Assembly (NCBI GenBank): GCA_965202585.1
Contig: OZ241832.1
Location: 6,324,001 to 6,388,000 of the forward strand
Reading direction: 5' to 3'
From: Thalia democratica
Lineage: Eukaryota
DNA length: 64,000 nucleotides
The notes below the pieces were generated by a model that saw only the letters and a program-made list of their open reading frames with translations, was not told the DNA's origin and made no database searches. The position numbers were made by a program, and so were the translations under genes. Each line of letters opens with the position of its first letter. Position 1 is the first letter of the stretch. Positions 1,011 to 57,822 of this stretch are shown here, piece after piece.

Positions 1011-1020
1011 ACAGGGCTTT

Positions 1021-24438: not shown

Positions 24439-24986
24439 CTTGCAAAAGATAGTTTATAAATATAACTTGCATGTATTTTACATAAATAGCAAAAACCTAA
24501 CTAATTATTATAAAAAATAGACTACCTTATTATGACGCAACAATATGGTAAAAAAATAATAATAAAATTTAAGGATTTAATGTGGAAAAATAGCAGAAAA
24601 GAATAATTCGTATAATTGATGCAAATGATCTTTTAAATTCCCTAACTTTATGTGGACAAATTAAGAAGAAAACGTTTAATGTAGAAGTAGCATAAATTTG
24701 AAACAAGTGGCTCATGAGTAATTTATATCTGTTATCTTTCACACAACTTGATAGTTTAATAAGTCTGTAATATGTTTTCGTTAAGTGAAAATTAAATTCA
24801 GTCATGTACTAGTCATGACTTAAAAGTACTAGCACATTAACTCGTACATCCAAGTCATAACTCAAAAAGGTGCCGACCAGCAGAGTAACCGGGCCTAAAG
24901 GACAAGAATTAAAAAAAAACTAAGGGCAGGCCGGGGAGATGACAGGTGCGGAGCACCGTGTCATCGACCGGCCGTAGCCCTTTGTT
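24439..24986. repeat. Third, truncated copy of the repeat head (A'), leading into the array
   Basis: Homologous to about 48-593. It lacks the internal duplication of the array unit in its 5' part, but is identical to the array unit from about 24812. Confidence 0.9.
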
Positions 24987-27900
24987 ACAATAAGTTCACT
25001 TTGTGCATGTTTATTGTAATGTATAATGAATGTTAGCACAACTGTGTTTGTATAGCTCATTAGTAAGAACAATCTATTCAACAAATTAGTTAGTACTTAG
25101 GTCGGAGAGCAAGTGTAATCTTGAAACTAACTGTATTGTAAAATTAAGCAAGTATTTTTACCAATAGGATGCAGCTTAATTTTAAGGCTTTTACCTACTT
25201 TAAACGGGTTGTGTGAACGGACTAATACTTTACAAAGAAGAATATACACAAAGATTGATCAACGGAATTTCGGAAGTGTGAAGTACAAGAAGTTATTTAC
25301 TTAAAAAGATAGTTTATAAATATAACTTGCATGTATTTTACATAAGTAGCACAAACCTAAGAAATTATTTAAAAAAAGAGACTACCTCATTATGACGCAA
25401 CAATATGGTAAAGAAAAAAAAAATAAATTTAAGGATTTAATGTGGAAAAATAGCAGAAAAAGAAAAGTTCGTATAATTGATGCAAATGATTTTTTGAATT
25501 CCCTGCCTTTAAGTGGACAAATTAAGAACAAATTGTTTTATGTATGAATAATGAAATTAAAAACAAGTCGCTCTTGTACGATTAATGCAAATGATTTATA
25601 AATTTACCTAATTAAGACGTAAATATTTTGCAGAAGTATTTAAAACAAATGGCTCATGAGTAATTTTAATCTTTCATACAACTTAATAGTTAATAAAATT
25701 CTGTTATATGTTCTAGTTAAGTGAAATTTATATTCAGTCATGACTTAAAAGTACTAGCACATTAACTCGTACATCCAAGTCATAACTCAAAAAGGTGCCG
25801 ACCAGCAGAGTAACCGGGCCTAAAGGACAAGAATTAAAAAAAAACTAAGGGCAGGCCGGGGAGATGACAGGTGCGGAGCACCGTGTCATCGACCGGCCGT
25901 AGCCCTTTGTTACAATAAGTTCACTTTGTGCATGTTTATTGTAATGTATAATGAATGTTAGCACAACTGTGTTTGTATAGCTCATTAGTAAGAACAATCT
26001 ATTCAACAAATTAGTTAGTACTTAGGTCGGAGAGCAAGTGTAATCTTGAAACTAACTGTATTGTAAAATTAAGCAAGTATTTTTACCAATAGGATGCAGC
26101 TTAATTTTAAGGCTTTTACCTACTTTAAACGGGTTGTGTGAACGGACTAATACTTTACAAAGAAGAATATACACAAAGATTGATCAACGGAATTTCGGAA
26201 GTGTGAAGTACAAGAAGTTATTTACTTAAAAAGATAGTTTATAAATATAACTTGCATGTATTTTACATAAGTAGCACAAACCTAAGAAATTATTTAAAAA
26301 AAGAGACTACCTCATTATGACGCAACAATATGGTAAAGAAAAAAAAAATAAATTTAAGGATTTAATGTGGAAAAATAGCAGAAAAAGAAAAGTTCGTATA
26401 ATTGATGCAAATGATTTTTTGAATTCCCTGCCTTTAAGTGGACAAATTAAGAACAAATTGTTTTATGTATGAATAATGAAATTAAAAACAAGTCGCTCTT
26501 GTACGATTAATGCAAATGATTTATAAATTTACCTAATTAAGACGTAAATATTTTGCAGAAGTATTTAAAACAAATGGCTCATGAGTAATTTTAATCTTTC
26601 ATACAACTTAATAGTTAATAAAATTCTGTTATATGTTCTAGTTAAGTGAAATTTATATTCAGTCATGACTTAAAAGTACTAGCACATTAACTCGTACATC
26701 CAAGTCATAACTCAAAAAGGTGCCGACCAGCAGAGTAACCGGGCCTAAAGGACAAGAATTAAAAAAAAACTAAGGGCAGGCCGGGGAGATGACAGGTGCG
26801 GAGCACCGTGTCATCGACCGGCCGTAGCCCTTTGTTACAATAAGTTCACTTTGTGCATGTTTATTGTAATGTATAATGAATGTTAGCACAACTGTGTTTG
26901 TATAGCTCATTAGTAAGAACAATCTATTCAACAAATTAGTTAGTACTTAGGTCGGAGAGCAAGTGTAATCTTGAAACTAACTGTATTGTAAAATTAAGCA
27001 AGTATTTTTACCAATAGGATGCAGCTTAATTTTAAGGCTTTTACCTACTTTAAACGGGTTGTGTGAACGGACTAATACTTTACAAAGAAGAATATACACA
27101 AAGATTGATCAACGGAATTTCGGAAGTGTGAAGTACAAGAAGTTATTTACTTAAAAAGATAGTTTATAAATATAACTTGCATGTATTTTACATAAGTAGC
27201 ACAAACCTAAGAAATTATTTAAAAAAAGAGACTACCTCATTATGACGCAACAATATGGTAAAGAAAAAAAAAATAAATTTAAGGATTTAATGTGGAAAAA
27301 TAGCAGAAAAAGAAAAGTTCGTATAATTGATGCAAATGATTTTTTGAATTCCCTGCCTTTAAGTGGACAAATTAAGAACAAATTGTTTTATGTATGAATA
27401 ATGAAATTAAAAACAAGTCGCTCTTGTACGATTAATGCAAATGATTTATAAATTTACCTAATTAAGACGTAAATATTTTGCAGAAGTATTTAAAACAAAT
27501 GGCTCATGAGTAATTTTAATCTTTCATACAACTTAATAGTTAATAAAATTCTGTTATATGTTCTAGTTAAGTGAAATTTATATTCAGTCATGACTTAAAA
27601 GTACTAGCACATTAACTCGTACATCCAAGTCATAACTCAAAAAGGTGCCGACCAGCAGAGTAACCGGGCCTAAAGGACAAGAATTAAAAAAAAACTAAGG
27701 GCAGGCCGGGGAGATGACAGGTGCGGAGCACCGTGTCATCGACCGGCCGTAGCCCTTTGTTACAATAAGTTCACTTTGTGCATGTTTATTGTAATGTATA
27801 ATGAATGTTAGCACAACTGTGTTTGTATAGCTCATTAGTAAGAACAATCTATTCAACAAATTAGTTAGTACTTAGGTCGGAGAGCAAGTGTAATCTTGAA

Positions 27901-30900
27901 ACTAACTGTATTGTAAAATTAAGCAAGTATTTTTACCAATAGGATGCAGCTTAATTTTAAGGCTTTTACCTACTTTAAACGGGTTGTGTGAACGGACTAA
28001 TACTTTACAAAGAAGAATATACACAAAGATTGATCAACGGAATTTCGGAAGTGTGAAGTACAAGAAGTTATTTACTTAAAAAGATAGTTTATAAATATAA
28101 CTTGCATGTATTTTACATAAGTAGCACAAACCTAAGAAATTATTTAAAAAAAGAGACTACCTCATTATGACGCAACAATATGGTAAAGAAAAAAAAAATA
28201 AATTTAAGGATTTAATGTGGAAAAATAGCAGAAAAAGAAAAGTTCGTATAATTGATGCAAATGATTTTTTGAATTCCCTGCCTTTAAGTGGACAAATTAA
28301 GAACAAATTGTTTTATGTATGAATAATGAAATTAAAAACAAGTCGCTCTTGTACGATTAATGCAAATGATTTATAAATTTACCTAATTAAGACGTAAATA
28401 TTTTGCAGAAGTATTTAAAACAAATGGCTCATGAGTAATTTTAATCTTTCATACAACTTAATAGTTAATAAAATTCTGTTATATGTTCTAGTTAAGTGAA
28501 ATTTATATTCAGTCATGACTTAAAAGTACTAGCACATTAACTCGTACATCCAAGTCATAACTCAAAAAGGTGCCGACCAGCAGAGTAACCGGGCCTAAAG
28601 GACAAGAATTAAAAAAAAACTAAGGGCAGGCCGGGGAGATGACAGGTGCGGAGCACCGTGTCATCGACCGGCCGTAGCCCTTTGTTACAATAAGTTCACT
28701 TTGTGCATGTTTATTGTAATGTATAATGAATGTTAGCACAACTGTGTTTGTATAGCTCATTAGTAAGAACAATCTATTCAACAAATTAGTTAGTACTTAG
28801 GTCGGAGAGCAAGTGTAATCTTGAAACTAACTGTATTGTAAAATTAAGCAAGTATTTTTACCAATAGGATGCAGCTTAATTTTAAGGCTTTTACCTACTT
28901 TAAACGGGTTGTGTGAACGGACTAATACTTTACAAAGAAGAATATACACAAAGATTGATCAACGGAATTTCGGAAGTGTGAAGTACAAGAAGTTATTTAC
29001 TTAAAAAGATAGTTTATAAATATAACTTGCATGTATTTTACATAAGTAGCACAAACCTAAGAAATTATTTAAAAAAAGAGACTACCTCATTATGACGCAA
29101 CAATATGGTAAAGAAAAAAAAAATAAATTTAAGGATTTAATGTGGAAAAATAGCAGAAAAAGAAAAGTTCGTATAATTGATGCAAATGATTTTTTGAATT
29201 CCCTGCCTTTAAGTGGACAAATTAAGAACAAATTGTTTTATGTATGAATAATGAAATTAAAAACAAGTCGCTCTTGTACGATTAATGCAAATGATTTATA
29301 AATTTACCTAATTAAGACGTAAATATTTTGCAGAAGTATTTAAAACAAATGGCTCATGAGTAATTTTAATCTTTCATACAACTTAATAGTTAATAAAATT
29401 CTGTTATATGTTCTAGTTAAGTGAAATTTATATTCAGTCATGACTTAAAAGTACTAGCACATTAACTCGTACATCCAAGTCATAACTCAAAAAGGTGCCG
29501 ACCAGCAGAGTAACCGGGCCTAAAGGACAAGAATTAAAAAAAAACTAAGGGCAGGCCGGGGAGATGACAGGTGCGGAGCACCGTGTCATCGACCGGCCGT
29601 AGCCCTTTGTTACAATAAGTTCACTTTGTGCATGTTTATTGTAATGTATAATGAATGTTAGCACAACTGTGTTTGTATAGCTCATTAGTAAGAACAATCT
29701 ATTCAACAAATTAGTTAGTACTTAGGTCGGAGAGCAAGTGTAATCTTGAAACTAACTGTATTGTAAAATTAAGCAAGTATTTTTACCAATAGGATGCAGC
29801 TTAATTTTAAGGCTTTTACCTACTTTAAACGGGTTGTGTGAACGGACTAATACTTTACAAAGAAGAATATACACAAAGATTGATCAACGGAATTTCGGAA
29901 GTGTGAAGTACAAGAAGTTATTTACTTAAAAAGATAGTTTATAAATATAACTTGCATGTATTTTACATAAGTAGCACAAACCTAAGAAATTATTTAAAAA
30001 AAGAGACTACCTCATTATGACGCAACAATATGGTAAAGAAAAAAAAAATAAATTTAAGGATTTAATGTGGAAAAATAGCAGAAAAAGAAAAGTTCGTATA
30101 ATTGATGCAAATGATTTTTTGAATTCCCTGCCTTTAAGTGGACAAATTAAGAACAAATTGTTTTATGTATGAATAATGAAATTAAAAACAAGTCGCTCTT
30201 GTACGATTAATGCAAATGATTTATAAATTTACCTAATTAAGACGTAAATATTTTGCAGAAGTATTTAAAACAAATGGCTCATGAGTAATTTTAATCTTTC
30301 ATACAACTTAATAGTTAATAAAATTCTGTTATATGTTCTAGTTAAGTGAAATTTATATTCAGTCATGACTTAAAAGTACTAGCACATTAACTCGTACATC
30401 CAAGTCATAACTCAAAAAGGTGCCGACCAGCAGAGTAACCGGGCCTAAAGGACAAGAATTAAAAAAAAACTAAGGGCAGGCCGGGGAGATGACAGGTGCG
30501 GAGCACCGTGTCATCGACCGGCCGTAGCCCTTTGTTACAATAAGTTCACTTTGTGCATGTTTATTGTAATGTATAATGAATGTTAGCACAACTGTGTTTG
30601 TATAGCTCATTAGTAAGAACAATCTATTCAACAAATTAGTTAGTACTTAGGTCGGAGAGCAAGTGTAATCTTGAAACTAACTGTATTGTAAAATTAAGCA
30701 AGTATTTTTACCAATAGGATGCAGCTTAATTTTAAGGCTTTTACCTACTTTAAACGGGTTGTGTGAACGGACTAATACTTTACAAAGAAGAATATACACA
30801 AAGATTGATCAACGGAATTTCGGAAGTGTGAAGTACAAGAAGTTATTTACTTAAAAAGATAGTTTATAAATATAACTTGCATGTATTTTACATAAGTAGC

Positions 30901-33900
30901 ACAAACCTAAGAAATTATTTAAAAAAAGAGACTACCTCATTATGACGCAACAATATGGTAAAGAAAAAAAAAATAAATTTAAGGATTTAATGTGGAAAAA
31001 TAGCAGAAAAAGAAAAGTTCGTATAATTGATGCAAATGATTTTTTGAATTCCCTGCCTTTAAGTGGACAAATTAAGAACAAATTGTTTTATGTATGAATA
31101 ATGAAATTAAAAACAAGTCGCTCTTGTACGATTAATGCAAATGATTTATAAATTTACCTAATTAAGACGTAAATATTTTGCAGAAGTATTTAAAACAAAT
31201 GGCTCATGAGTAATTTTAATCTTTCATACAACTTAATAGTTAATAAAATTCTGTTATATGTTCTAGTTAAGTGAAATTTATATTCAGTCATGACTTAAAA
31301 GTACTAGCACATTAACTCGTACATCCAAGTCATAACTCAAAAAGGTGCCGACCAGCAGAGTAACCGGGCCTAAAGGACAAGAATTAAAAAAAAACTAAGG
31401 GCAGGCCGGGGAGATGACAGGTGCGGAGCACCGTGTCATCGACCGGCCGTAGCCCTTTGTTACAATAAGTTCACTTTGTGCATGTTTATTGTAATGTATA
31501 ATGAATGTTAGCACAACTGTGTTTGTATAGCTCATTAGTAAGAACAATCTATTCAACAAATTAGTTAGTACTTAGGTCGGAGAGCAAGTGTAATCTTGAA
31601 ACTAACTGTATTGTAAAATTAAGCAAGTATTTTTACCAATAGGATGCAGCTTAATTTTAAGGCTTTTACCTACTTTAAACGGGTTGTGTGAACGGACTAA
31701 TACTTTACAAAGAAGAATATACACAAAGATTGATCAACGGAATTTCGGAAGTGTGAAGTACAAGAAGTTATTTACTTAAAAAGATAGTTTATAAATATAA
31801 CTTGCATGTATTTTACATAAGTAGCACAAACCTAAGAAATTATTTAAAAAAAGAGACTACCTCATTATGACGCAACAATATGGTAAAGAAAAAAAAAATA
31901 AATTTAAGGATTTAATGTGGAAAAATAGCAGAAAAAGAAAAGTTCGTATAATTGATGCAAATGATTTTTTGAATTCCCTGCCTTTAAGTGGACAAATTAA
32001 GAACAAATTGTTTTATGTATGAATAATGAAATTAAAAACAAGTCGCTCTTGTACGATTAATGCAAATGATTTATAAATTTACCTAATTAAGACGTAAATA
32101 TTTTGCAGAAGTATTTAAAACAAATGGCTCATGAGTAATTTTAATCTTTCATACAACTTAATAGTTAATAAAATTCTGTTATATGTTCTAGTTAAGTGAA
32201 ATTTATATTCAGTCATGACTTAAAAGTACTAGCACATTAACTCGTACATCCAAGTCATAACTCAAAAAGGTGCCGACCAGCAGAGTAACCGGGCCTAAAG
32301 GACAAGAATTAAAAAAAAACTAAGGGCAGGCCGGGGAGATGACAGGTGCGGAGCACCGTGTCATCGACCGGCCGTAGCCCTTTGTTACAATAAGTTCACT
32401 TTGTGCATGTTTATTGTAATGTATAATGAATGTTAGCACAACTGTGTTTGTATAGCTCATTAGTAAGAACAATCTATTCAACAAATTAGTTAGTACTTAG
32501 GTCGGAGAGCAAGTGTAATCTTGAAACTAACTGTATTGTAAAATTAAGCAAGTATTTTTACCAATAGGATGCAGCTTAATTTTAAGGCTTTTACCTACTT
32601 TAAACGGGTTGTGTGAACGGACTAATACTTTACAAAGAAGAATATACACAAAGATTGATCAACGGAATTTCGGAAGTGTGAAGTACAAGAAGTTATTTAC
32701 TTAAAAAGATAGTTTATAAATATAACTTGCATGTATTTTACATAAGTAGCACAAACCTAAGAAATTATTTAAAAAAAGAGACTACCTCATTATGACGCAA
32801 CAATATGGTAAAGAAAAAAAAAATAAATTTAAGGATTTAATGTGGAAAAATAGCAGAAAAAGAAAAGTTCGTATAATTGATGCAAATGATTTTTTGAATT
32901 CCCTGCCTTTAAGTGGACAAATTAAGAACAAATTGTTTTATGTATGAATAATGAAATTAAAAACAAGTCGCTCTTGTACGATTAATGCAAATGATTTATA
33001 AATTTACCTAATTAAGACGTAAATATTTTGCAGAAGTATTTAAAACAAATGGCTCATGAGTAATTTTAATCTTTCATACAACTTAATAGTTAATAAAATT
33101 CTGTTATATGTTCTAGTTAAGTGAAATTTATATTCAGTCATGACTTAAAAGTACTAGCACATTAACTCGTACATCCAAGTCATAACTCAAAAAGGTGCCG
33201 ACCAGCAGAGTAACCGGGCCTAAAGGACAAGAATTAAAAAAAAACTAAGGGCAGGCCGGGGAGATGACAGGTGCGGAGCACCGTGTCATCGACCGGCCGT
33301 AGCCCTTTGTTACAATAAGTTCACTTTGTGCATGTTTATTGTAATGTATAATGAATGTTAGCACAACTGTGTTTGTATAGCTCATTAGTAAGAACAATCT
33401 ATTCAACAAATTAGTTAGTACTTAGGTCGGAGAGCAAGTGTAATCTTGAAACTAACTGTATTGTAAAATTAAGCAAGTATTTTTACCAATAGGATGCAGC
33501 TTAATTTTAAGGCTTTTACCTACTTTAAACGGGTTGTGTGAACGGACTAATACTTTACAAAGAAGAATATACACAAAGATTGATCAACGGAATTTCGGAA
33601 GTGTGAAGTACAAGAAGTTATTTACTTAAAAAGATAGTTTATAAATATAACTTGCATGTATTTTACATAAGTAGCACAAACCTAAGAAATTATTTAAAAA
33701 AAGAGACTACCTCATTATGACGCAACAATATGGTAAAGAAAAAAAAAATAAATTTAAGGATTTAATGTGGAAAAATAGCAGAAAAAGAAAAGTTCGTATA
33801 ATTGATGCAAATGATTTTTTGAATTCCCTGCCTTTAAGTGGACAAATTAAGAACAAATTGTTTTATGTATGAATAATGAAATTAAAAACAAGTCGCTCTT

Positions 33901-36900
33901 GTACGATTAATGCAAATGATTTATAAATTTACCTAATTAAGACGTAAATATTTTGCAGAAGTATTTAAAACAAATGGCTCATGAGTAATTTTAATCTTTC
34001 ATACAACTTAATAGTTAATAAAATTCTGTTATATGTTCTAGTTAAGTGAAATTTATATTCAGTCATGACTTAAAAGTACTAGCACATTAACTCGTACATC
34101 CAAGTCATAACTCAAAAAGGTGCCGACCAGCAGAGTAACCGGGCCTAAAGGACAAGAATTAAAAAAAAACTAAGGGCAGGCCGGGGAGATGACAGGTGCG
34201 GAGCACCGTGTCATCGACCGGCCGTAGCCCTTTGTTACAATAAGTTCACTTTGTGCATGTTTATTGTAATGTATAATGAATGTTAGCACAACTGTGTTTG
34301 TATAGCTCATTAGTAAGAACAATCTATTCAACAAATTAGTTAGTACTTAGGTCGGAGAGCAAGTGTAATCTTGAAACTAACTGTATTGTAAAATTAAGCA
34401 AGTATTTTTACCAATAGGATGCAGCTTAATTTTAAGGCTTTTACCTACTTTAAACGGGTTGTGTGAACGGACTAATACTTTACAAAGAAGAATATACACA
34501 AAGATTGATCAACGGAATTTCGGAAGTGTGAAGTACAAGAAGTTATTTACTTAAAAAGATAGTTTATAAATATAACTTGCATGTATTTTACATAAGTAGC
34601 ACAAACCTAAGAAATTATTTAAAAAAAGAGACTACCTCATTATGACGCAACAATATGGTAAAGAAAAAAAAAATAAATTTAAGGATTTAATGTGGAAAAA
34701 TAGCAGAAAAAGAAAAGTTCGTATAATTGATGCAAATGATTTTTTGAATTCCCTGCCTTTAAGTGGACAAATTAAGAACAAATTGTTTTATGTATGAATA
34801 ATGAAATTAAAAACAAGTCGCTCTTGTACGATTAATGCAAATGATTTATAAATTTACCTAATTAAGACGTAAATATTTTGCAGAAGTATTTAAAACAAAT
34901 GGCTCATGAGTAATTTTAATCTTTCATACAACTTAATAGTTAATAAAATTCTGTTATATGTTCTAGTTAAGTGAAATTTATATTCAGTCATGACTTAAAA
35001 GTACTAGCACATTAACTCGTACATCCAAGTCATAACTCAAAAAGGTGCCGACCAGCAGAGTAACCGGGCCTAAAGGACAAGAATTAAAAAAAAACTAAGG
35101 GCAGGCCGGGGAGATGACAGGTGCGGAGCACCGTGTCATCGACCGGCCGTAGCCCTTTGTTACAATAAGTTCACTTTGTGCATGTTTATTGTAATGTATA
35201 ATGAATGTTAGCACAACTGTGTTTGTATAGCTCATTAGTAAGAACAATCTATTCAACAAATTAGTTAGTACTTAGGTCGGAGAGCAAGTGTAATCTTGAA
35301 ACTAACTGTATTGTAAAATTAAGCAAGTATTTTTACCAATAGGATGCAGCTTAATTTTAAGGCTTTTACCTACTTTAAACGGGTTGTGTGAACGGACTAA
35401 TACTTTACAAAGAAGAATATACACAAAGATTGATCAACGGAATTTCGGAAGTGTGAAGTACAAGAAGTTATTTACTTAAAAAGATAGTTTATAAATATAA
35501 CTTGCATGTATTTTACATAAGTAGCACAAACCTAAGAAATTATTTAAAAAAAGAGACTACCTCATTATGACGCAACAATATGGTAAAGAAAAAAAAAATA
35601 AATTTAAGGATTTAATGTGGAAAAATAGCAGAAAAAGAAAAGTTCGTATAATTGATGCAAATGATTTTTTGAATTCCCTGCCTTTAAGTGGACAAATTAA
35701 GAACAAATTGTTTTATGTATGAATAATGAAATTAAAAACAAGTCGCTCTTGTACGATTAATGCAAATGATTTATAAATTTACCTAATTAAGACGTAAATA
35801 TTTTGCAGAAGTATTTAAAACAAATGGCTCATGAGTAATTTTAATCTTTCATACAACTTAATAGTTAATAAAATTCTGTTATATGTTCTAGTTAAGTGAA
35901 ATTTATATTCAGTCATGACTTAAAAGTACTAGCACATTAACTCGTACATCCAAGTCATAACTCAAAAAGGTGCCGACCAGCAGAGTAACCGGGCCTAAAG
36001 GACAAGAATTAAAAAAAAACTAAGGGCAGGCCGGGGAGATGACAGGTGCGGAGCACCGTGTCATCGACCGGCCGTAGCCCTTTGTTACAATAAGTTCACT
36101 TTGTGCATGTTTATTGTAATGTATAATGAATGTTAGCACAACTGTGTTTGTATAGCTCATTAGTAAGAACAATCTATTCAACAAATTAGTTAGTACTTAG
36201 GTCGGAGAGCAAGTGTAATCTTGAAACTAACTGTATTGTAAAATTAAGCAAGTATTTTTACCAATAGGATGCAGCTTAATTTTAAGGCTTTTACCTACTT
36301 TAAACGGGTTGTGTGAACGGACTAATACTTTACAAAGAAGAATATACACAAAGATTGATCAACGGAATTTCGGAAGTGTGAAGTACAAGAAGTTATTTAC
36401 TTAAAAAGATAGTTTATAAATATAACTTGCATGTATTTTACATAAGTAGCACAAACCTAAGAAATTATTTAAAAAAAGAGACTACCTCATTATGACGCAA
36501 CAATATGGTAAAGAAAAAAAAAATAAATTTAAGGATTTAATGTGGAAAAATAGCAGAAAAAGAAAAGTTCGTATAATTGATGCAAATGATTTTTTGAATT
36601 CCCTGCCTTTAAGTGGACAAATTAAGAACAAATTGTTTTATGTATGAATAATGAAATTAAAAACAAGTCGCTCTTGTACGATTAATGCAAATGATTTATA
36701 AATTTACCTAATTAAGACGTAAATATTTTGCAGAAGTATTTAAAACAAATGGCTCATGAGTAATTTTAATCTTTCATACAACTTAATAGTTAATAAAATT
36801 CTGTTATATGTTCTAGTTAAGTGAAATTTATATTCAGTCATGACTTAAAAGTACTAGCACATTAACTCGTACATCCAAGTCATAACTCAAAAAGGTGCCG

Positions 36901-39900: not shown

Positions 39901-40675
39901 GGTCGGAGAGCAAGTGTAATCTTGAAACTAACTGTATTGTAAAATTAAGCAAGTATTTTTACCAATAGGATGCAGCTTAATTTTAAGGCTTTTACCTACT
40001 TTAAACGGGTTGTGTGAACGGACTAATACTTTACAAAGAAGAATATACACAAAGATTGATCAACGGAATTTCGGAAGTGTGAAGTACAAGAAGTTATTTA
40101 CTTAAAAAGATAGTTTATAAATATAACTTGCATGTATTTTACATAAGTAGCACAAACCTAAGAAATTATTTAAAAAAAGAGACTACCTCATTATGACGCA
40201 ACAATATGGTAAAGAAAAAAAAAATAAATTTAAGGATTTAATGTGGAAAAATAGCAGAAAAAGAAAAGTTCGTATAATTGATGCAAATGATTTTTTGAAT
40301 TCCCTGCCTTTAAGTGGACAAATTAAGAACAAATTGTTTTATGTATGAATAATGAAATTAAAAACAAGTCGCTCTTGTACGATTAATGCAAATGATTTAT
40401 AAATTTACCTAATTAAGACGTAAATATTTTGCAGAAGTATTTAAAACAAATGGCTCATGAGTAATTTTAATCTTTCATACAACTTAATAGTTAATAAAAT
40501 TCTGTTATATGTTCTAGTTAAGTGAAATTTATATTCAGTCATGACTTAAAAGTACTAGCACATTAACTCGTACATCCAAGTCATAACTCAAAAAGGTGCC
40601 GACCAGCAGAGTAACCGGGCCTAAAGGACAAGAATTAAAAAAAAACTAAGGGCAGGCCGGGGAGATGACAGGTGC
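24987..40675. repeat. 925-bp tandem array, part 1 (16 full units plus one cut by the gap; 18 hairpin copies counting A')
   Basis: CTCGTACATC recurs at 24841, 25766, 26691, 27616 and 28541. GGTGC at 24945 vs 40671 is 17x925+1. One extra A at about 37441. Confidence 0.99.
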
Positions 40676-40875
40676 NNNNNNNNNNNNNNNNNNNNNNNNN
40701 NNNNNNNNNNNNNNNNNNNNNNNNNNNNNNNNNNNNNNNNNNNNNNNNNNNNNNNNNNNNNNNNNNNNNNNNNNNNNNNNNNNNNNNNNNNNNNNNNNNN
40801 NNNNNNNNNNNNNNNNNNNNNNNNNNNNNNNNNNNNNNNNNNNNNNNNNNNNNNNNNNNNNNNNNNNNNNNNNNN
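40676..40875. other. Assembly gap (200 N)
   Basis: Run of exactly 200 N, a fixed-size scaffolding gap, so the true distance is unknown. Confidence 0.99.
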
Positions 40876-47500: not shown

Positions 47501-50500
47501 ACTCGTACATCCAAGTCATAACTCAAAAAGGTGCCGACCAGCAGAGTAACCGGGCCTAAAGGACAAGAATTAAAAAAAAACTAAGGGCAGGCCGGGGAGA
47601 TGACAGGTGCGGAGCACCGTGTCATCGACCGGCCGTAGCCCTTTGTTACAATAAGTTCACTTTGTGCATGTTTATTGTAATGTATAATGAATGTTAGCAC
47701 AACTGTGTTTGTATAGCTCATTAGTAAGAACAATCTATTCAACAAATTAGTTAGTACTTAGGTCGGAGAGCAAGTGTAATCTTGAAACTAACTGTATTGT
47801 AAAATTAAGCAAGTATTTTTACCAATAGGATGCAGCTTAATTTTAAGGCTTTTACCTACTTTAAACGGGTTGTGTGAACGGACTAATACTTTACAAAGAA
47901 GAATATACACAAAGATTGATCAACGGAATTTCGGAAGTGTGAAGTACAAGAAGTTATTTACTTAAAAAGATAGTTTATAAATATAACTTGCATGTATTTT
48001 ACATAAGTAGCACAAACCTAAGAAATTATTTAAAAAAAGAGACTACCTCATTATGACGCAACAATATGGTAAAGAAAAAAAAAATAAATTTAAGGATTTA
48101 ATGTGGAAAAATAGCAGAAAAAGAAAAGTTCGTATAATTGATGCAAATGATTTTTTGAATTCCCTGCCTTTAAGTGGACAAATTAAGAACAAATTGTTTT
48201 ATGTATGAATAATGAAATTAAAAACAAGTCGCTCTTGTACGATTAATGCAAATGATTTATAAATTTACCTAATTAAGACGTAAATATTTTGCAGAAGTAT
48301 TTAAAACAAATGGCTCATGAGTAATTTTAATCTTTCATACAACTTAATAGTTAATAAAATTCTGTTATATGTTCTAGTTAAGTGAAATTTATATTCAGTC
48401 ATGACTTAAAAGTACTAGCACATTAACTCGTACATCCAAGTCATAACTCAAAAAGGTGCCGACCAGCAGAGTAACCGGGCCTAAAGGACAAGAATTAAAA
48501 AAAAACTAAGGGCAGGCCGGGGAGATGACAGGTGCGGAGCACCGTGTCATCGACCGGCCGTAGCCCTTTGTTACAATAAGTTCACTTTGTGCATGTTTAT
48601 TGTAATGTATAATGAATGTTAGCACAACTGTGTTTGTATAGCTCATTAGTAAGAACAATCTATTCAACAAATTAGTTAGTACTTAGGTCGGAGAGCAAGT
48701 GTAATCTTGAAACTAACTGTATTGTAAAATTAAGCAAGTATTTTTACCAATAGGATGCAGCTTAATTTTAAGGCTTTTACCTACTTTAAACGGGTTGTGT
48801 GAACGGACTAATACTTTACAAAGAAGAATATACACAAAGATTGATCAACGGAATTTCGGAAGTGTGAAGTACAAGAAGTTATTTACTTAAAAAGATAGTT
48901 TATAAATATAACTTGCATGTATTTTACATAAGTAGCACAAACCTAAGAAATTATTTAAAAAAAGAGACTACCTCATTATGACGCAACAATATGGTAAAGA
49001 AAAAAAAAATAAATTTAAGGATTTAATGTGGAAAAATAGCAGAAAAAGAAAAGTTCGTATAATTGATGCAAATGATTTTTTGAATTCCCTGCCTTTAAGT
49101 GGACAAATTAAGAACAAATTGTTTTATGTATGAATAATGAAATTAAAAACAAGTCGCTCTTGTACGATTAATGCAAATGATTTATAAATTTACCTAATTA
49201 AGACGTAAATATTTTGCAGAAGTATTTAAAACAAATGGCTCATGAGTAATTTTAATCTTTCATACAACTTAATAGTTAATAAAATTCTGTTATATGTTCT
49301 AGTTAAGTGAAATTTATATTCAGTCATGACTTAAAAGTACTAGCACATTAACTCGTACATCCAAGTCATAACTCAAAAAGGTGCCGACCAGCAGAGTAAC
49401 CGGGCCTAAAGGACAAGAATTAAAAAAAAACTAAGGGCAGGCCGGGGAGATGACAGGTGCGGAGCACCGTGTCATCGACCGGCCGTAGCCCTTTGTTACA
49501 ATAAGTTCACTTTGTGCATGTTTATTGTAATGTATAATGAATGTTAGCACAACTGTGTTTGTATAGCTCATTAGTAAGAACAATCTATTCAACAAATTAG
49601 TTAGTACTTAGGTCGGAGAGCAAGTGTAATCTTGAAACTAACTGTATTGTAAAATTAAGCAAGTATTTTTACCAATAGGATGCAGCTTAATTTTAAGGCT
49701 TTTACCTACTTTAAACGGGTTGTGTGAACGGACTAATACTTTACAAAGAAGAATATACACAAAGATTGATCAACGGAATTTCGGAAGTGTGAAGTACAAG
49801 AAGTTATTTACTTAAAAAGATAGTTTATAAATATAACTTGCATGTATTTTACATAAGTAGCACAAACCTAAGAAATTATTTAAAAAAAGAGACTACCTCA
49901 TTATGACGCAACAATATGGTAAAGAAAAAAAAAATAAATTTAAGGATTTAATGTGGAAAAATAGCAGAAAAAGAAAAGTTCGTATAATTGATGCAAATGA
50001 TTTTTTGAATTCCCTGCCTTTAAGTGGACAAATTAAGAACAAATTGTTTTATGTATGAATAATGAAATTAAAAACAAGTCGCTCTTGTACGATTAATGCA
50101 AATGATTTATAAATTTACCTAATTAAGACGTAAATATTTTGCAGAAGTATTTAAAACAAATGGCTCATGAGTAATTTTAATCTTTCATACAACTTAATAG
50201 TTAATAAAATTCTGTTATATGTTCTAGTTAAGTGAAATTTATATTCAGTCATGACTTAAAAGTACTAGCACATTAACTCGTACATCCAAGTCATAACTCA
50301 AAAAGGTGCCGACCAGCAGAGTAACCGGGCCTAAAGGACAAGAATTAAAAAAAAACTAAGGGCAGGCCGGGGAGATGACAGGTGCGGAGCACCGTGTCAT
50401 CGACCGGCCGTAGCCCTTTGTTACAATAAGTTCACTTTGTGCATGTTTATTGTAATGTATAATGAATGTTAGCACAACTGTGTTTGTATAGCTCATTAGT

Positions 50501-53500
50501 AAGAACAATCTATTCAACAAATTAGTTAGTACTTAGGTCGGAGAGCAAGTGTAATCTTGAAACTAACTGTATTGTAAAATTAAGCAAGTATTTTTACCAA
50601 TAGGATGCAGCTTAATTTTAAGGCTTTTACCTACTTTAAACGGGTTGTGTGAACGGACTAATACTTTACAAAGAAGAATATACACAAAGATTGATCAACG
50701 GAATTTCGGAAGTGTGAAGTACAAGAAGTTATTTACTTAAAAAGATAGTTTATAAATATAACTTGCATGTATTTTACATAAGTAGCACAAACCTAAGAAA
50801 TTATTTAAAAAAAGAGACTACCTCATTATGACGCAACAATATGGTAAAGAAAAAAAAAATAAATTTAAGGATTTAATGTGGAAAAATAGCAGAAAAAGAA
50901 AAGTTCGTATAATTGATGCAAATGATTTTTTGAATTCCCTGCCTTTAAGTGGACAAATTAAGAACAAATTGTTTTATGTATGAATAATGAAATTAAAAAC
51001 AAGTCGCTCTTGTACGATTAATGCAAATGATTTATAAATTTACCTAATTAAGACGTAAATATTTTGCAGAAGTATTTAAAACAAATGGCTCATGAGTAAT
51101 TTTAATCTTTCATACAACTTAATAGTTAATAAAATTCTGTTATATGTTCTAGTTAAGTGAAATTTATATTCAGTCATGACTTAAAAGTACTAGCACATTA
51201 ACTCGTACATCCAAGTCATAACTCAAAAAGGTGCCGACCAGCAGAGTAACCGGGCCTAAAGGACAAGAATTAAAAAAAAACTAAGGGCAGGCCGGGGAGA
51301 TGACAGGTGCGGAGCACCGTGTCATCGACCGGCCGTAGCCCTTTGTTACAATAAGTTCACTTTGTGCATGTTTATTGTAATGTATAATGAATGTTAGCAC
51401 AACTGTGTTTGTATAGCTCATTAGTAAGAACAATCTATTCAACAAATTAGTTAGTACTTAGGTCGGAGAGCAAGTGTAATCTTGAAACTAACTGTATTGT
51501 AAAATTAAGCAAGTATTTTTACCAATAGGATGCAGCTTAATTTTAAGGCTTTTACCTACTTTAAACGGGTTGTGTGAACGGACTAATACTTTACAAAGAA
51601 GAATATACACAAAGATTGATCAACGGAATTTCGGAAGTGTGAAGTACAAGAAGTTATTTACTTAAAAAGATAGTTTATAAATATAACTTGCATGTATTTT
51701 ACATAAGTAGCACAAACCTAAGAAATTATTTAAAAAAAGAGACTACCTCATTATGACGCAACAATATGGTAAAGAAAAAAAAAATAAATTTAAGGATTTA
51801 ATGTGGAAAAATAGCAGAAAAAGAAAAGTTCGTATAATTGATGCAAATGATTTTTTGAATTCCCTGCCTTTAAGTGGACAAATTAAGAACAAATTGTTTT
51901 ATGTATGAATAATGAAATTAAAAACAAGTCGCTCTTGTACGATTAATGCAAATGATTTATAAATTTACCTAATTAAGACGTAAATATTTTGCAGAAGTAT
52001 TTAAAACAAATGGCTCATGAGTAATTTTAATCTTTCATACAACTTAATAGTTAATAAAATTCTGTTATATGTTCTAGTTAAGTGAAATTTATATTCAGTC
52101 ATGACTTAAAAGTACTAGCACATTAACTCGTACATCCAAGTCATAACTCAAAAAGGTGCCGACCAGCAGAGTAACCGGGCCTAAAGGACAAGAATTAAAA
52201 AAAAACTAAGGGCAGGCCGGGGAGATGACAGGTGCGGAGCACCGTGTCATCGACCGGCCGTAGCCCTTTGTTACAATAAGTTCACTTTGTGCATGTTTAT
52301 TGTAATGTATAATGAATGTTAGCACAACTGTGTTTGTATAGCTCATTAGTAAGAACAATCTATTCAACAAATTAGTTAGTACTTAGGTCGGAGAGCAAGT
52401 GTAATCTTGAAACTAACTGTATTGTAAAATTAAGCAAGTATTTTTACCAATAGGATGCAGCTTAATTTTAAGGCTTTTACCTACTTTAAACGGGTTGTGT
52501 GAACGGACTAATACTTTACAAAGAAGAATATACACAAAGATTGATCAACGGAATTTCGGAAGTGTGAAGTACAAGAAGTTATTTACTTAAAAAGATAGTT
52601 TATAAATATAACTTGCATGTATTTTACATAAGTAGCACAAACCTAAGAAATTATTTAAAAAAAGAGACTACCTCATTATGACGCAACAATATGGTAAAGA
52701 AAAAAAAAATAAATTTAAGGATTTAATGTGGAAAAATAGCAGAAAAAGAAAAGTTCGTATAATTGATGCAAATGATTTTTTGAATTCCCTGCCTTTAAGT
52801 GGACAAATTAAGAACAAATTGTTTTATGTATGAATAATGAAATTAAAAACAAGTCGCTCTTGTACGATTAATGCAAATGATTTATAAATTTACCTAATTA
52901 AGACGTAAATATTTTGCAGAAGTATTTAAAACAAATGGCTCATGAGTAATTTTAATCTTTCATACAACTTAATAGTTAATAAAATTCTGTTATATGTTCT
53001 AGTTAAGTGAAATTTATATTCAGTCATGACTTAAAAGTACTAGCACATTAACTCGTACATCCAAGTCATAACTCAAAAAGGTGCCGACCAGCAGAGTAAC
53101 CGGGCCTAAAGGACAAGAATTAAAAAAAAACTAAGGGCAGGCCGGGGAGATGACAGGTGCGGAGCACCGTGTCATCGACCGGCCGTAGCCCTTTGTTACA
53201 ATAAGTTCACTTTGTGCATGTTTATTGTAATGTATAATGAATGTTAGCACAACTGTGTTTGTATAGCTCATTAGTAAGAACAATCTATTCAACAAATTAG
53301 TTAGTACTTAGGTCGGAGAGCAAGTGTAATCTTGAAACTAACTGTATTGTAAAATTAAGCAAGTATTTTTACCAATAGGATGCAGCTTAATTTTAAGGCT
53401 TTTACCTACTTTAAACGGGTTGTGTGAACGGACTAATACTTTACAAAGAAGAATATACACAAAGATTGATCAACGGAATTTCGGAAGTGTGAAGTACAAG

Positions 53501-56500
53501 AAGTTATTTACTTAAAAAGATAGTTTATAAATATAACTTGCATGTATTTTACATAAGTAGCACAAACCTAAGAAATTATTTAAAAAAAGAGACTACCTCA
53601 TTATGACGCAACAATATGGTAAAGAAAAAAAAAATAAATTTAAGGATTTAATGTGGAAAAATAGCAGAAAAAGAAAAGTTCGTATAATTGATGCAAATGA
53701 TTTTTTGAATTCCCTGCCTTTAAGTGGACAAATTAAGAACAAATTGTTTTATGTATGAATAATGAAATTAAAAACAAGTCGCTCTTGTACGATTAATGCA
53801 AATGATTTATAAATTTACCTAATTAAGACGTAAATATTTTGCAGAAGTATTTAAAACAAATGGCTCATGAGTAATTTTAATCTTTCATACAACTTAATAG
53901 TTAATAAAATTCTGTTATATGTTCTAGTTAAGTGAAATTTATATTCAGTCATGACTTAAAAGTACTAGCACATTAACTCGTACATCCAAGTCATAACTCA
54001 AAAAGGTGCCGACCAGCAGAGTAACCGGGCCTAAAGGACAAGAATTAAAAAAAAACTAAGGGCAGGCCGGGGAGATGACAGGTGCGGAGCACCGTGTCAT
54101 CGACCGGCCGTAGCCCTTTGTTACAATAAGTTCACTTTGTGCATGTTTATTGTAATGTATAATGAATGTTAGCACAACTGTGTTTGTATAGCTCATTAGT
54201 AAGAACAATCTATTCAACAAATTAGTTAGTACTTAGGTCGGAGAGCAAGTGTAATCTTGAAACTAACTGTATTGTAAAATTAAGCAAGTATTTTTACCAA
54301 TAGGATGCAGCTTAATTTTAAGGCTTTTACCTACTTTAAACGGGTTGTGTGAACGGACTAATACTTTACAAAGAAGAATATACACAAAGATTGATCAACG
54401 GAATTTCGGAAGTGTGAAGTACAAGAAGTTATTTACTTAAAAAGATAGTTTATAAATATAACTTGCATGTATTTTACATAAGTAGCACAAACCTAAGAAA
54501 TTATTTAAAAAAAGAGACTACCTCATTATGACGCAACAATATGGTAAAGAAAAAAAAAATAAATTTAAGGATTTAATGTGGAAAAATAGCAGAAAAAGAA
54601 AAGTTCGTATAATTGATGCAAATGATTTTTTGAATTCCCTGCCTTTAAGTGGACAAATTAAGAACAAATTGTTTTATGTATGAATAATGAAATTAAAAAC
54701 AAGTCGCTCTTGTACGATTAATGCAAATGATTTATAAATTTACCTAATTAAGACGTAAATATTTTGCAGAAGTATTTAAAACAAATGGCTCATGAGTAAT
54801 TTTAATCTTTCATACAACTTAATAGTTAATAAAATTCTGTTATATGTTCTAGTTAAGTGAAATTTATATTCAGTCATGACTTAAAAGTACTAGCACATTA
54901 ACTCGTACATCCAAGTCATAACTCAAAAAGGTGCCGACCAGCAGAGTAACCGGGCCTAAAGGACAAGAATTAAAAAAAAACTAAGGGCAGGCCGGGGAGA
55001 TGACAGGTGCGGAGCACCGTGTCATCGACCGGCCGTAGCCCTTTGTTACAATAAGTTCACTTTGTGCATGTTTATTGTAATGTATAATGAATGTTAGCAC
55101 AACTGTGTTTGTATAGCTCATTAGTAAGAACAATCTATTCAACAAATTAGTTAGTACTTAGGTCGGAGAGCAAGTGTAATCTTGAAACTAACTGTATTGT
55201 AAAATTAAGCAAGTATTTTTACCAATAGGATGCAGCTTAATTTTAAGGCTTTTACCTACTTTAAACGGGTTGTGTGAACGGACTAATACTTTACAAAGAA
55301 GAATATACACAAAGATTGATCAACGGAATTTCGGAAGTGTGAAGTACAAGAAGTTATTTACTTAAAAAGATAGTTTATAAATATAACTTGCATGTATTTT
55401 ACATAAGTAGCACAAACCTAAGAAATTATTTAAAAAAAGAGACTACCTCATTATGACGCAACAATATGGTAAAGAAAAAAAAAATAAATTTAAGGATTTA
55501 ATGTGGAAAAATAGCAGAAAAAGAAAAGTTCGTATAATTGATGCAAATGATTTTTTGAATTCCCTGCCTTTAAGTGGACAAATTAAGAACAAATTGTTTT
55601 ATGTATGAATAATGAAATTAAAAACAAGTCGCTCTTGTACGATTAATGCAAATGATTTATAAATTTACCTAATTAAGACGTAAATATTTTGCAGAAGTAT
55701 TTAAAACAAATGGCTCATGAGTAATTTTAATCTTTCATACAACTTAATAGTTAATAAAATTCTGTTATATGTTCTAGTTAAGTGAAATTTATATTCAGTC
55801 ATGACTTAAAAGTACTAGCACATTAACTCGTACATCCAAGTCATAACTCAAAAAGGTGCCGACCAGCAGAGTAACCGGGCCTAAAGGACAAGAATTAAAA
55901 AAAAACTAAGGGCAGGCCGGGGAGATGACAGGTGCGGAGCACCGTGTCATCGACCGGCCGTAGCCCTTTGTTACAATAAGTTCACTTTGTGCATGTTTAT
56001 TGTAATGTATAATGAATGTTAGCACAACTGTGTTTGTATAGCTCATTAGTAAGAACAATCTATTCAACAAATTAGTTAGTACTTAGGTCGGAGAGCAAGT
56101 GTAATCTTGAAACTAACTGTATTGTAAAATTAAGCAAGTATTTTTACCAATAGGATGCAGCTTAATTTTAAGGCTTTTACCTACTTTAAACGGGTTGTGT
56201 GAACGGACTAATACTTTACAAAGAAGAATATACACAAAGATTGATCAACGGAATTTCGGAAGTGTGAAGTACAAGAAGTTATTTACTTAAAAAGATAGTT
56301 TATAAATATAACTTGCATGTATTTTACATAAGTAGCACAAACCTAAGAAATTATTTAAAAAAAGAGACTACCTCATTATGACGCAACAATATGGTAAAGA
56401 AAAAAAAAATAAATTTAAGGATTTAATGTGGAAAAATAGCAGAAAAAGAAAAGTTCGTATAATTGATGCAAATGATTTTTTGAATTCCCTGCCTTTAAGT

Positions 56501-57822
56501 GGACAAATTAAGAACAAATTGTTTTATGTATGAATAATGAAATTAAAAACAAGTCGCTCTTGTACGATTAATGCAAATGATTTATAAATTTACCTAATTA
56601 AGACGTAAATATTTTGCAGAAGTATTTAAAACAAATGGCTCATGAGTAATTTTAATCTTTCATACAACTTAATAGTTAATAAAATTCTGTTATATGTTCT
56701 AGTTAAGTGAAATTTATATTCAGTCATGACTTAAAAGTACTAGCACATTAACTCGTACATCCAAGTCATAACTCAAAAAGGTGCCGACCAGCAGAGTAAC
56801 CGGGCCTAAAGGACAAGAATTAAAAAAAAACTAAGGGCAGGCCGGGGAGATGACAGGTGCGGAGCACCGTGTCATCGACCGGCCGTAGCCCTTTGTTACA
56901 ATAAGTTCACTTTGTGCATGTTTATTGTAATGTATAATGAATGTTAGCACAACTGTGTTTGTATAGCTCATTAGTAAGAACAATCTATTCAACAAATTAG
57001 TTAGTACTTAGGTCGGAGAGCAAGTGTAATCTTGAAACTAACTGTATTGTAAAATTAAGCAAGTATTTTTACCAATAGGATGCAGCTTAATTTTAAGGCT
57101 TTTACCTACTTTAAACGGGTTGTGTGAACGGACTAATACTTTACAAAGAAGAATATACACAAAGATTGATCAACGGAATTTCGGAAGTGTGAAGTACAAG
57201 AAGTTATTTACTTAAAAAGATAGTTTATAAATATAACTTGCATGTATTTTACATAAGTAGCACAAACCTAAGAAATTATTTAAAAAAAGAGACTACCTCA
57301 TTATGACGCAACAATATGGTAAAGAAAAAAAAAATAAATTTAAGGATTTAATGTGGAAAAATAGCAGAAAAAGAAAAGTTCGTATAATTGATGCAAATGA
57401 TTTTTTGAATTCCCTGCCTTTAAGTGGACAAATTAAGAACAAATTGTTTTATGTATGAATAATGAAATTAAAAACAAGTCGCTCTTGTACGATTAATGCA
57501 AATGATTTATAAATTTACCTAATTAAGACGTAAATATTTTGCAGAAGTATTTAAAACAAATGGCTCATGAGTAATTTTAATCTTTCATACAACTTAATAG
57601 TTAATAAAATTCTGTTATATGTTCTAGTTAAGTGAAATTTATATTCAGTCATGACTTAAAAGTACTAGCACATTAACTCGTACATCCAAGTCATAACTCA
57701 AAAAGGTGCCGACCAGCAGAGTAACCGGGCCTAAAGGACAAGAATTAAAAAAAAACTAAGGGCAGGCCGGGGAGATGACAGGTGCGGAGCACCGTGTCAT
57801 CGACCGGCCGTAGCCCTTTGTT
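41540..57822. repeat. 925-bp tandem array, part 2 (partial unit plus 17 units; 18 hairpin copies)
   Basis: GGTGC at 42052 vs 57781 is 17x925+4. Single-base homopolymer indels seen only between about 41670 and 46375. The last unit continues into the full-length repeat. Confidence 0.99.

What the first reader, a model, noticed from the sequence alone, without database searches (positions are those of the whole stretch)
24987..57822. 925-bp tandem amplification whose unit boundary lies inside the palindrome arm
Each unit is about 350 bp of upstream flank plus about 575 bp of repeat head. It ends at GCCCTTTGTT, precisely where the T9-AATTCTTGTCC outer arm should begin, and then jumps back 925 bp. 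Only the last unit restores the full arm and continues into the 6.8-kb body. Each unit thus keeps the GC-rich GNA hairpin but loses the long outer stem. Candidate mechanisms (inference): nicking at or near the hairpin followed by rolling-circle replication of a 925-nt circle and reintegration, or cruciform breakage or fork stalling with repeated re-replication. A satellite born at a defined structural site next to its parent element is a rare snapshot and may point to an undescribed amplification system.
Basis: partly seen in the sequence, partly recalled or inferred. Interest (0 to 1): 0.82.

Follow-up and report, generated by a model that had tools for sequence, protein, structure and literature searches.

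The report
Young satellite from a repeat's head
A 925-bp stretch made of the first ~620 bp of a dispersed non-coding repeat plus ~300 bp of other repeat DNA is copied head to tail at least 34 times in this pelagic tunicate genome; this looks like an ordinary, very young repeat-derived satellite and not a new amplification system.

Summary
The array is real in the sequence. There are 34 identical GTT|ACAATAAG junctions with a 925-bp period. Units differ only by single-base homopolymer slips. It is not one continuous run. The left contig stops at the hairpin apex. After the N gap come 664 bp of unrelated DNA, and the array resumes in a different phase. That gives two blocks of about 17 and 17.6 units.

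The unit is a 303-bp spacer plus a 622-bp repeat head. The head is cut 2 nt into the T9 run of the right arm of a 104-nt palindrome. Only copy A and the last unit keep the whole palindrome.

All junctions descend from one break, so the palindrome link rests on a single event. The leftmost head is a mosaic: about 13% diverged for 370 nt, then identical to the units for its last 171 nt. That marks homologous exchange.

The spacer is not the family's upstream flank. In other samples it lies in another context.

No ORF, known RNA family, tRNA or Helitron termini were found.

Best reading: one break at the palindrome put a truncated head upstream of a full copy, and unequal exchange then expanded the interval. 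Rolling-circle origin is not excluded.

The scan has noted other repeat-derived satellites in this genome, but not this one.

The parts
38..598 (+). Head of copy A of the dispersed non-coding repeat (called H here). It is 88% identical to the head in the array units and about 93% identical to the edge head.
508..611 (.). Complete 104-nt palindrome of copy A: GGACAAGAATT-A9-C-AAAGGGC ... GCCCTTT-G-T9-AATTCTTGTCC. Its apex is GCGAAGC, a known very stable DNA mini-hairpin motif.
   Evidence: motif per PMC13037366
612..6764 (+). Body of copy A. It is 90-93% identical to 57823-64000. It has no ORF longer than 112 codons, and identity is uniform along it. Its true end is unknown because copy B leaves the window.
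24444..24986 (+). Edge head, a mosaic. Bases 24444-24815 are an independently diverged H head that lacks the unit's 82-nt internal duplication and has 15 private changes. Bases 24816-24986 are identical to the array units and end at the same GTT|ACA break.
24987..25289 (+). Spacer, first copy (303 bp). It has no other copy in the window outside the array. In other samples it lies in a different left-hand context from base 24990 on, so ACA is filler or junction sequence.
24987..40675 (+). Array block 1: 16.96 units of 925 bp. The contig ends just before the GGA triloop of the hairpin.
40676..40875 (.). Assembly gap (N). The sequence on its two sides is not continuous and not in phase.
40876..41539 (.). 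664 bp of non-array DNA at the start of the second contig. It is unique in the window and holds a weak internal ~180-bp repeat. It joins a unit-type head about 68 nt inside the head.
41540..57822 (+). Array block 2: 17.6 units. All homopolymer slips in this block lie in the units nearest the contig start.
57736..57840 (.). Complete palindrome of the last unit (copy B), with apex GCGGAGC.
57823..64000 (+). Body of copy B, which runs off the window.

Best explanation
This is a very young, locally grown satellite derived from a dispersed non-coding repeat (H).

Step 1 (inferred). A single rearrangement joined an H head to the middle of another dispersed repeat. The head was broken 2 nt into the T9 run at the foot of the GC-rich hairpin. 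The join carries 3 nt (ACA) of filler. The result was a truncated head lying about 300 bp upstream of the head of a full H copy, in the same orientation. The palindrome probably caused that break, either by stalling a fork or by being cut as a hairpin or cruciform and then repaired by end joining.

Step 2 (supported by the mosaic edge and the in-register ends). Unequal homologous exchange, or replication slippage, between the two heads expanded the 925-bp interval (spacer plus head) to dozens of copies and keeps them identical. The leftmost head retained its old 5' part. The rightmost head is still attached to the full palindrome and body.

The units are non-coding, and no function is indicated.
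For: - The period and junctions are exact: 34 identical junctions and no substitutions in about 30 kb.
- The array is bounded by H heads on both sides, and its last unit runs seamlessly into the full element. That is the geometry expected from exchange between two direct repeats.
- The leftmost head switches sharply between 24810 and 24839. Before the switch it is about 13% diverged (27 unit-specific changes against 1 copy-A-specific change in 24644-24815, plus 15 private changes). After it the head is identical to the units over its last 171 nt (0 against 5-6). Fisher p is about 5e-6 (alignments). This is a recombination or conversion tract boundary.
- H is a multi-copy family. Copies A and B and the edge head have three different 5' flanks. 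Many 90-99% variant contigs appear in independent samples.
- The spacer belongs to another repeat. Alternative left-hand contexts and diverged paralogues appear in runs X1 and X6 (loose ends at 24990 and 25239).
- Exact unit contigs occur in runs from three differently labelled organisms (X1, X3, X4). The spacer-to-head junction is spanned exactly in two of them, X1 and X3 (records 7, 8, 13, 14, 16, 22, 24).
- Transposon dimers that expand into arrays by exchange are documented (PMC5932611; review PMC12628747).
Against: - The first step is inferred from one junction only. Nothing shows that the palindrome caused the break.
- The truncated head at the left edge is array-type in exactly the part that carries the break. 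It therefore gives no independent evidence that a truncated head existed before the array did.
- The second block begins at a non-homologous junction (664 bp of foreign DNA joined inside a head). Simple unequal exchange does not explain that.
- The contig end at the hairpin apex (about 3 chances in 925 if random) hints that the hairpin does something, biological or technical, that this model does not address.
- The head-to-spacer junction was not directly shown in independent reads.
Confidence: 0.55

Rival explanations
1. Rolling-circle origin. A 925-bp circle (spacer plus head, closed at the palindrome) was amplified by rolling-circle replication. Alternatively, a Helitron-like transposition terminated at the hairpin. 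The multimer then integrated by homologous recombination into a resident H copy.
For: - A single crossover between a multimeric circle and a resident head predicts the observed layout. The left hybrid would have a resident-type 5' part and an array-type 3' part. The inner units would be identical. The right hybrid would run into the resident's palindrome and body.
- The apex GCGAAGC/GCGGAGC is a very stable single-strand DNA hairpin motif (PMC13037366).
- Plant Helitron arrays are described as having many 5' ends and one 3' end (Xiong 2016, as summarised in PMC12628747). This array resembles that on the surface.
- The complete lack of substitutions fits one burst of copying.
Against: - H has neither TC...CTRR termini nor a subterminal 3' hairpin. 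The hairpin lies about 470-570 nt from the 5' end, and full copies read through it.
- No Rep/helicase or other ORF is present in 6.7 kb of body.
- One third of the unit is foreign spacer. No copy of the spacer lies downstream of copy A within 24 kb, so it is not H's 3' tail.
- The lack of substitutions may also reflect consensus polishing of a long-read assembly.
- No circle data are available.
Confidence: 0.15
2. Replication template switch. A fork stalled after copying the GC-rich hairpin, and the nascent end re-invaded 925 bp upstream (FoSTeS/MMBIR type). That made the first tandem duplication directly. Later exchange expanded it and recombined its left end with an older H head upstream.
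For: - A simple tandem duplication of the segment [ACAATAAG...GCCCTTTGTT] gives exactly the GTT|ACA junction, and it leaves the last copy continuous with T7AATTCTTGTCC.
- The break lies in a homopolymer at the foot of a strong hairpin.
- The mosaic edge shows that later recombination with a different head did take place.
Against: - This model needs the spacer's native upstream DNA to have stood left of the first unit. That DNA is not there, so an extra deletion or recombination step has to be assumed.
- There is no microhomology at the junction: TT|ACA against AAT|ATAAG in the alternative context.
- The model is not distinguishable from the best explanation with present data.
Confidence: 0.15
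3. Largely an assembly artefact. The tandem array is over-expanded or does not exist as drawn, and the two blocks are haplotype or paralogous contigs wrongly scaffolded in tandem.
For: - There is a scaffold gap inside the array.
- A contig ends at a hairpin.
- 664 bp of unrelated DNA follow the gap, and the phase is discontinuous across it.
- The only differences between units are homopolymer slips, typical of noisy long reads. Their absence elsewhere could be the result of consensus polishing.
- The two blocks are suspiciously similar in size, 17 and 17.6 units.
Against: - Two separately assembled contigs each carry about 17 units.
- Unit sequence is held exactly in independent runs (X1, X3, X4). 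In X1 and X6 it is also several-fold deeper than the neighbouring DNA: X1 exact unit contigs have depth about 5100 against 290-1260 for flank contigs, and X6 shows a similar excess. In X3 and X4 unit depth is only about that of the few flank contigs.
- The spacer-to-head junction is confirmed in X1 and X3.
- Long-read assemblers collapse tandem repeats more often than they invent them.
Confidence: 0.1

Closest known systems
Transposon tandem dimers that expand into satellite arrays (McGurk & Barbash 2018, PMC5932611; e.g. hobo expanded to about 16 tandem copies in one Drosophila line)
   Same: Two same-orientation copies of a dispersed repeat lie close together and give a substrate for unequal exchange. 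The result is a young, homogeneous array of a few dozen units that is still attached to a full element.
   Different: Here the upstream copy is truncated inside a palindrome, and 303 bp of unrelated repeat DNA is part of the unit. H is not shown to be a transposon, since no ORF, inverted terminal repeats or target-site duplications were identified. No population data are available.
Rolling-circle amplified arrays of truncated Helitrons (Xiong, Dooner & Du 2016, as summarised in PMC12628747)
   Same: There are many copies of the element's 5' part and a single complete 3' continuation. A hairpin lies at the truncation point. Unit numbers run from several to hundreds.
   Different: No TC/CTRR termini were found and no RepHel gene. 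The hairpin is internal, not subterminal at the 3' end, and full copies read through it. The unit contains foreign DNA.
Palindrome-mediated rearrangement (PATRR-type translocations, hairpin-capped breaks; from general knowledge)
   Same: A long near-perfect palindrome lies at a rearrangement breakpoint in AT-rich DNA.
   Different: Those breaks lie at the palindrome centre. Here the break is 35 nt 3' of the apex and 18 nt before the palindrome's end, and only one event is available.
Other repeat- or gene-derived satellites noted by this scan in the same genome (s1-271226, array derived from an R2 ORF; s1-271225, array of a truncated RING gene; s1-268676, macro-repeat attributed to unequal crossing-over)
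   Same: The same genome repeatedly turns fragments of dispersed or genic sequence into tandem arrays, with the parent stub still attached.
   Different: The parents and unit sizes differ. None of those cases involves a palindrome breakpoint.

Membership tests
Dispersed-repeat-derived satellite grown by unequal exchange | Head-to-tail units of constant period | tested here: met
   34 junctions; intervals of 925 bp, up to 927 with homopolymer slips
Dispersed-repeat-derived satellite grown by unequal exchange | Unit homologous to a repeat that also exists outside the array | tested here: met
   Copy A at 38-6764 (88-93%), three different 5' flanks, and many variant contigs in independent runs
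Dispersed-repeat-derived satellite grown by unequal exchange | Signature of homologous exchange: homogenised interior with a diverged or recombinant edge unit | tested here: met
   The edge head is a mosaic with a switch at 24810-24839, Fisher p about 5e-6
Dispersed-repeat-derived satellite grown by unequal exchange | Tandem arrangement present in independent DNA or long reads, with copy number varying between individuals | tested here: inconclusive
   Exact unit contigs are present in X1, X3 and X4, and the spacer-to-head junction is spanned in X1 and X3. The head-to-spacer junction was not among the rows shown. Contig depths are not copy numbers.
Helitron / Helitron-derived rolling-circle array | 5' TC and 3' CTRR termini with insertion between A and T | tested here: not met
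   The shared 5' boundary reads AGAA(A)GTTATTT and the truncated end reads GCCCTTTGTT. Neither strand shows TC...CTRR.
Helitron / Helitron-derived rolling-circle array | GC-rich hairpin 10-20 nt before the element's 3' end | tested here: not met
   The hairpin lies 6 nt before the truncated end, but full copies continue at least 6.2 kb beyond it. The true 3' end of H is outside the window.
Helitron / Helitron-derived rolling-circle array | Rep/helicase gene in autonomous members | tested here: not met
   No ORF longer than 112 codons in either body copy. Autonomous members elsewhere in the genome could not be searched.
Helitron / Helitron-derived rolling-circle array | Array units made only of element sequence, with many 5' ends and one 3' end | tested here: inconclusive
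   Many heads and one full continuation are present. However, 303 of the 925 bp are foreign and absent from 24 kb downstream of copy A.
Ribozyme-bearing tandem repeats (retrozyme-like) | Self-cleaving ribozyme motif in each unit | tested here: not met
   Rfam found nothing at gathering score in the whole window. With permissive E-values on the units and on copy A it found only chance-level snoRNA and miRNA hits.
Centre-break palindrome rearrangement (PATRR-like) | Breakpoint at the centre of the palindrome | tested here: not met
   The break follows base 57822 (593 in copy A), 35 nt 3' of the triloop

The most novel reading that the evidence does not exclude
The GC-rich GCGNAGC-capped hairpin may be a site-specific stop or nick signal for a single-strand DNA process. 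That process would release spacer-plus-head circles of 925 nt. The circles would be copied by rolling-circle replication and return to resident H copies by homologous recombination. The mosaic left edge, and a contig that ends exactly at the hairpin apex, would both be traces of this. It would be a hairpin-directed satellite generator in a chordate with no recognisable Rep gene nearby.
Probability: 0.1. Interest if true: 0.7.

Novelty: new member of a known kind. Interest (0 to 1): 0.3.

Why it matters
It is a clean, very early-stage example of satellite birth. The parent repeat, the single founding breakpoint, the recombinant edge unit and the homogeneous interior are all visible in one 64-kb window of a pelagic tunicate, a group whose repeats are barely described. 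The founding break sits at the foot of an unusually stable hairpin. The locus could therefore serve as a test case for whether DNA secondary structure seeds tandem duplications. As it stands it adds an example and not a mechanism.

Tried and rejected
- TRF missed the array because its longest period is 500. BLAST and motif counting were used instead.
- Exact-word scans of JGI metagenome contigs (two patterns) and of viral contigs found nothing. The test for 'same breakpoint, other flanks' therefore could not be run outside the window.
- Rfam at gathering score and at permissive thresholds gave no ribozyme or other RNA family. ARAGORN found no tRNA. A retrozyme or SINE reading was rejected.
- ORF scans of both body copies, the 9-kb left flank and the units gave only low-complexity AT-rich ORFs. 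A 51-codon ORF in the unit head is stopped in copy A. A coding-element reading was rejected.
- I tested whether the spacer is the 3' tail of H, as a circle deletion model would predict. A sensitive BLAST found no copy in the 24 kb after copy A, so this was rejected within the window.
- I tested whether the window holds a large tandem macro-unit starting at each head. The sequences upstream of copy A and of the edge head are unrelated, so this was rejected.
- The one read-laying run was meant to give copy number against a unique flank. The flank proved to be multi-copy in all samples (787 variant contigs in X1), so no copy number could be derived. Runs are coded and of unknown kind, so nothing can be said about transcription.
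- The bacterial promoter/terminator scan is not relevant to this eukaryote.
Full report
**What is there**

The window is AT-rich (24-32% GC). Earlier scan notes place it in a pelagic tunicate genome; I did not test that here.

BLAST of one 925-bp unit against the window returns back-to-back 100% matches from 25076 to 40675 and from 41540 to 57822. Counting the motif CCCTTTGTT|ACAATAAG gives 34 junctions. Of the 33 intervals between them, 27 are identical and one holds the gap. The other five differ only by one or two single-base homopolymer insertions or deletions. There is not one substitution in about 30 kb. Most of these slips lie in the units nearest the start of the second contig. That pattern looks like long-read noise at low coverage and not like biological variation.

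**The gap**

The two sides are not continuous.
- The left contig stops at ...GATGACAGGTGC. That is unit phase 888 of 925, immediately before the GGA triloop of the hairpin.
- After the N run come 664 bp (40876-41539) that match nothing else in the window, apart from low-complexity AT stretches.
- The unit then resumes at phase about 372, roughly 68 nt inside a head of the array type.

The finding's interval therefore holds two blocks, of 16.96 and 17.6 units. What joins them is unknown. The 664 bp may be the end of an insertion into a single array or the left edge of a second array. The blocks could also be contigs that were scaffolded together wrongly.

**Anatomy of the unit**

A dispersed repeat, called H here, is present as copy A (38-6764) and copy B (57200-64000).
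- The two copies are 90-93% identical, evenly along their length.
- The homology runs to the last base of the window, so '6.8 kb' is a lower bound set by the window.
- H has no ORF above 112 codons on either strand.
- About 470 nt from its 5' boundary H carries a 104-nt palindrome: GGACAAGAATT-A9-C-AAAGGGC, then a GC-rich core, then GCCCTTT-G-T9-AATTCTTGTCC.
- The palindrome folds as single-stranded DNA at -49.5 kcal/mol, z = -14.
- Its apex is GCGAAGC in copy A and GCGGAGC in the units and copy B. GCGNAGC is the documented 'extraordinarily stable mini-hairpin' motif (PMC13037366).

Each array unit has two parts.
- A 303-bp spacer (first copy at 24987-25289).
- A 622-bp H head. The head carries an 82-nt internal duplication and two small deletions relative to copy A.

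The head ends at GCCCTTTGTT, two T's into the T9 run. That is 35 nt 3' of the apex and 18 nt before the palindrome's end. The complete right arm occurs only twice in the window, in copy A and after the last unit. The truncated form keeps only the core hairpin, at -25.7 kcal/mol.

**The spacer is not the family's upstream flank**

Copy A, the edge head and the units share sequence only from the head's start. Upstream of that point the three are unrelated.

The spacer has no other copy in the window. In particular none lies in the 24 kb downstream of copy A, so it is not the 3' tail of H.

When Logan contigs of four public runs were laid on 21500-25911, runs X1 and X6 gave contigs in which the spacer, from base 24990 onwards, is preceded by a different sequence (...GATTATAATTTAAAT). 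Diverged paralogues of the spacer also appeared (loose ends at 24990 and 25239). The spacer is therefore a fragment of a second dispersed repeat. The junction carries three bases, ACA, of filler or uncertain origin.

**The left edge is a recombinant**

The first head (24444-24986) was compared site by site with copy A and with the unit.
- 24444-24643: 6 changes specific to the unit lineage, 13 specific to copy A and 11 private to the edge head.
- 24644-24815: 27 unit-specific, 1 copy-A-specific and 4 private. The edge head also lacks the 82-nt duplication.
- 24816-24986: 0 unit-specific, 5 copy-A-specific (6 counted, one of which is a slicing artefact at the end of the alignment) and 0 private. 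The edge head is identical to the units in this stretch.

The contrast between the last two segments gives Fisher p of about 5e-6. The leftmost head is therefore an old, independently diverged H head. Its last 171 nt or more, including the break, have been replaced by array-type sequence. A crossover or conversion boundary lies between 24810 and 24839. This is direct evidence that homologous exchange between heads has acted on the array. It also means that the edge junction is not an independent second instance of the break.

**Independent samples**

The unit's 31-mers are held by runs labelled as five different (coded) organisms and by many marine metagenomes.

In the laid contigs, exact unit pieces with no differences occur in X1 (depth about 5100), X3 (6-9) and X4 (3-6). 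The spacer-to-head junction at 25289/25290 is spanned exactly in X1 and X3 (records 7, 8, 13, 14, 16, 22, 24).

The supposedly unique left flank turned out to be multi-copy. In X1, 787 contigs were laid, mostly 90-99% alike, with summed depths of 1100-3800. Depth ratios (unit over flank, about 2-10 fold) are therefore not copy numbers. The head-to-spacer junction was not among the rows shown. The kind of these runs (DNA or RNA) is not on record. The unit sequence is thus certainly real and abundant outside this assembly. Its tandem arrangement is supported only by the two contigs of this assembly.

**Mechanism**

The geometry is [old head / array-type 3' part]-spacer-(head-spacer)n-head-full palindrome-body. 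This is what unequal homologous exchange between two direct repeats about 300 bp apart produces, and the mosaic edge shows that such exchange took place.

The founding event is one break in the T9 run at the foot of the hairpin, joined to the inside of another repeat. With one event, the link to the palindrome is suggestive only.

A replication template switch at the hairpin would give the same junction. It needs an extra step to explain the left edge.

A 925-bp circle amplified by rolling-circle replication and integrated by a single crossover into a resident H copy also reproduces the layout. The GCGNAGC apex and the contig end at the apex (about 3 chances in 925 if random) keep that idea open. 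Against it:
- H fails the Helitron tests. It has no TC/CTRR termini, its hairpin is internal and read through by full copies, and no Rep gene is present.
- One third of the unit is foreign DNA.
- No ribozyme or other RNA family is present.
- No circle data exist.

**Comparison with what is known**

Transposon dimers that expand into arrays are documented in Drosophila, including a 16-copy hobo expansion (PMC5932611). A 2025 review lists unequal crossing-over, end joining and aberrant Helitron rolling-circle replication as routes from dispersed repeats to satellites. It cites plant arrays with many Helitron 5' ends and one 3' end (PMC12628747).

The present locus is a new example of that known kind. 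Its special features are the breakpoint at a strong palindrome and a well-preserved recombinant edge. This scan has already noted other fragment-derived satellites in the same genome, but not this unit.

**Verdict**

- The inference of an undescribed amplification system is not supported.
- Interest is modest.

Noticed in passing
window 40660-40675: The first contig ends exactly at the last paired base before the hairpin's GGA triloop. By chance this would happen about 3 times in 925. The cause may be technical (reads or consensus failing at a very stable hairpin) or it may hide a real structural change at the apex. It was also flagged as finding s1-287358.
   Followed up: partly
window 9034-15407: There are three tandem, partly decayed copies of a BTB/BACK-Kelch (KLHL-type) gene. 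ORFs at 10154-11352, 12372-13178 and 14441-15361 match Pfam BACK and Kelch. The copies are 75-94% identical, and the later ones are interrupted.
   Followed up: partly
window 1022-1204 and 58253-58438: A 75/76-bp tandem repeat of about 2.4 copies sits at the same position in both copies of the H body.
   Followed up: no
window 16000-58000: The + strand is consistently A- and G-rich (AT skew about +0.1, GC skew up to +0.13). The bias starts about 8 kb before the array and ends sharply at 58 kb, where the H body begins. The left flank therefore shares the array's strand bias.
   Followed up: no
window 21500-24436: The stretch left of the array, unique within the window, is multi-copy in independent samples. 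Hundreds of variant contigs at 90-99% identity were laid, with a sharp depth spike at 22980-23127. The array lies in repeat-dense DNA.
   Followed up: partly
window 24987-25911 (unit): Exact unit sequence is held by public runs labelled with five different coded organisms and by many marine metagenomes. The labels could not be decoded. They could reflect one species under several labels, prey or contaminant DNA, or sharing between species.
   Followed up: partly
window 40887-41219: The 664-bp non-array stretch after the gap holds two diverged ~180-bp direct repeats (65% identical), each with a GGGCYACAAGSCVHHA-like core. Its identity is unknown.
   Followed up: no
window 26317-26472 (each unit): A 51-codon ATG ORF (MTQQYGKEKK...) recurs in every unit head but is stopped after 9 codons in copy A. 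It is most likely not a gene.
   Followed up: partly
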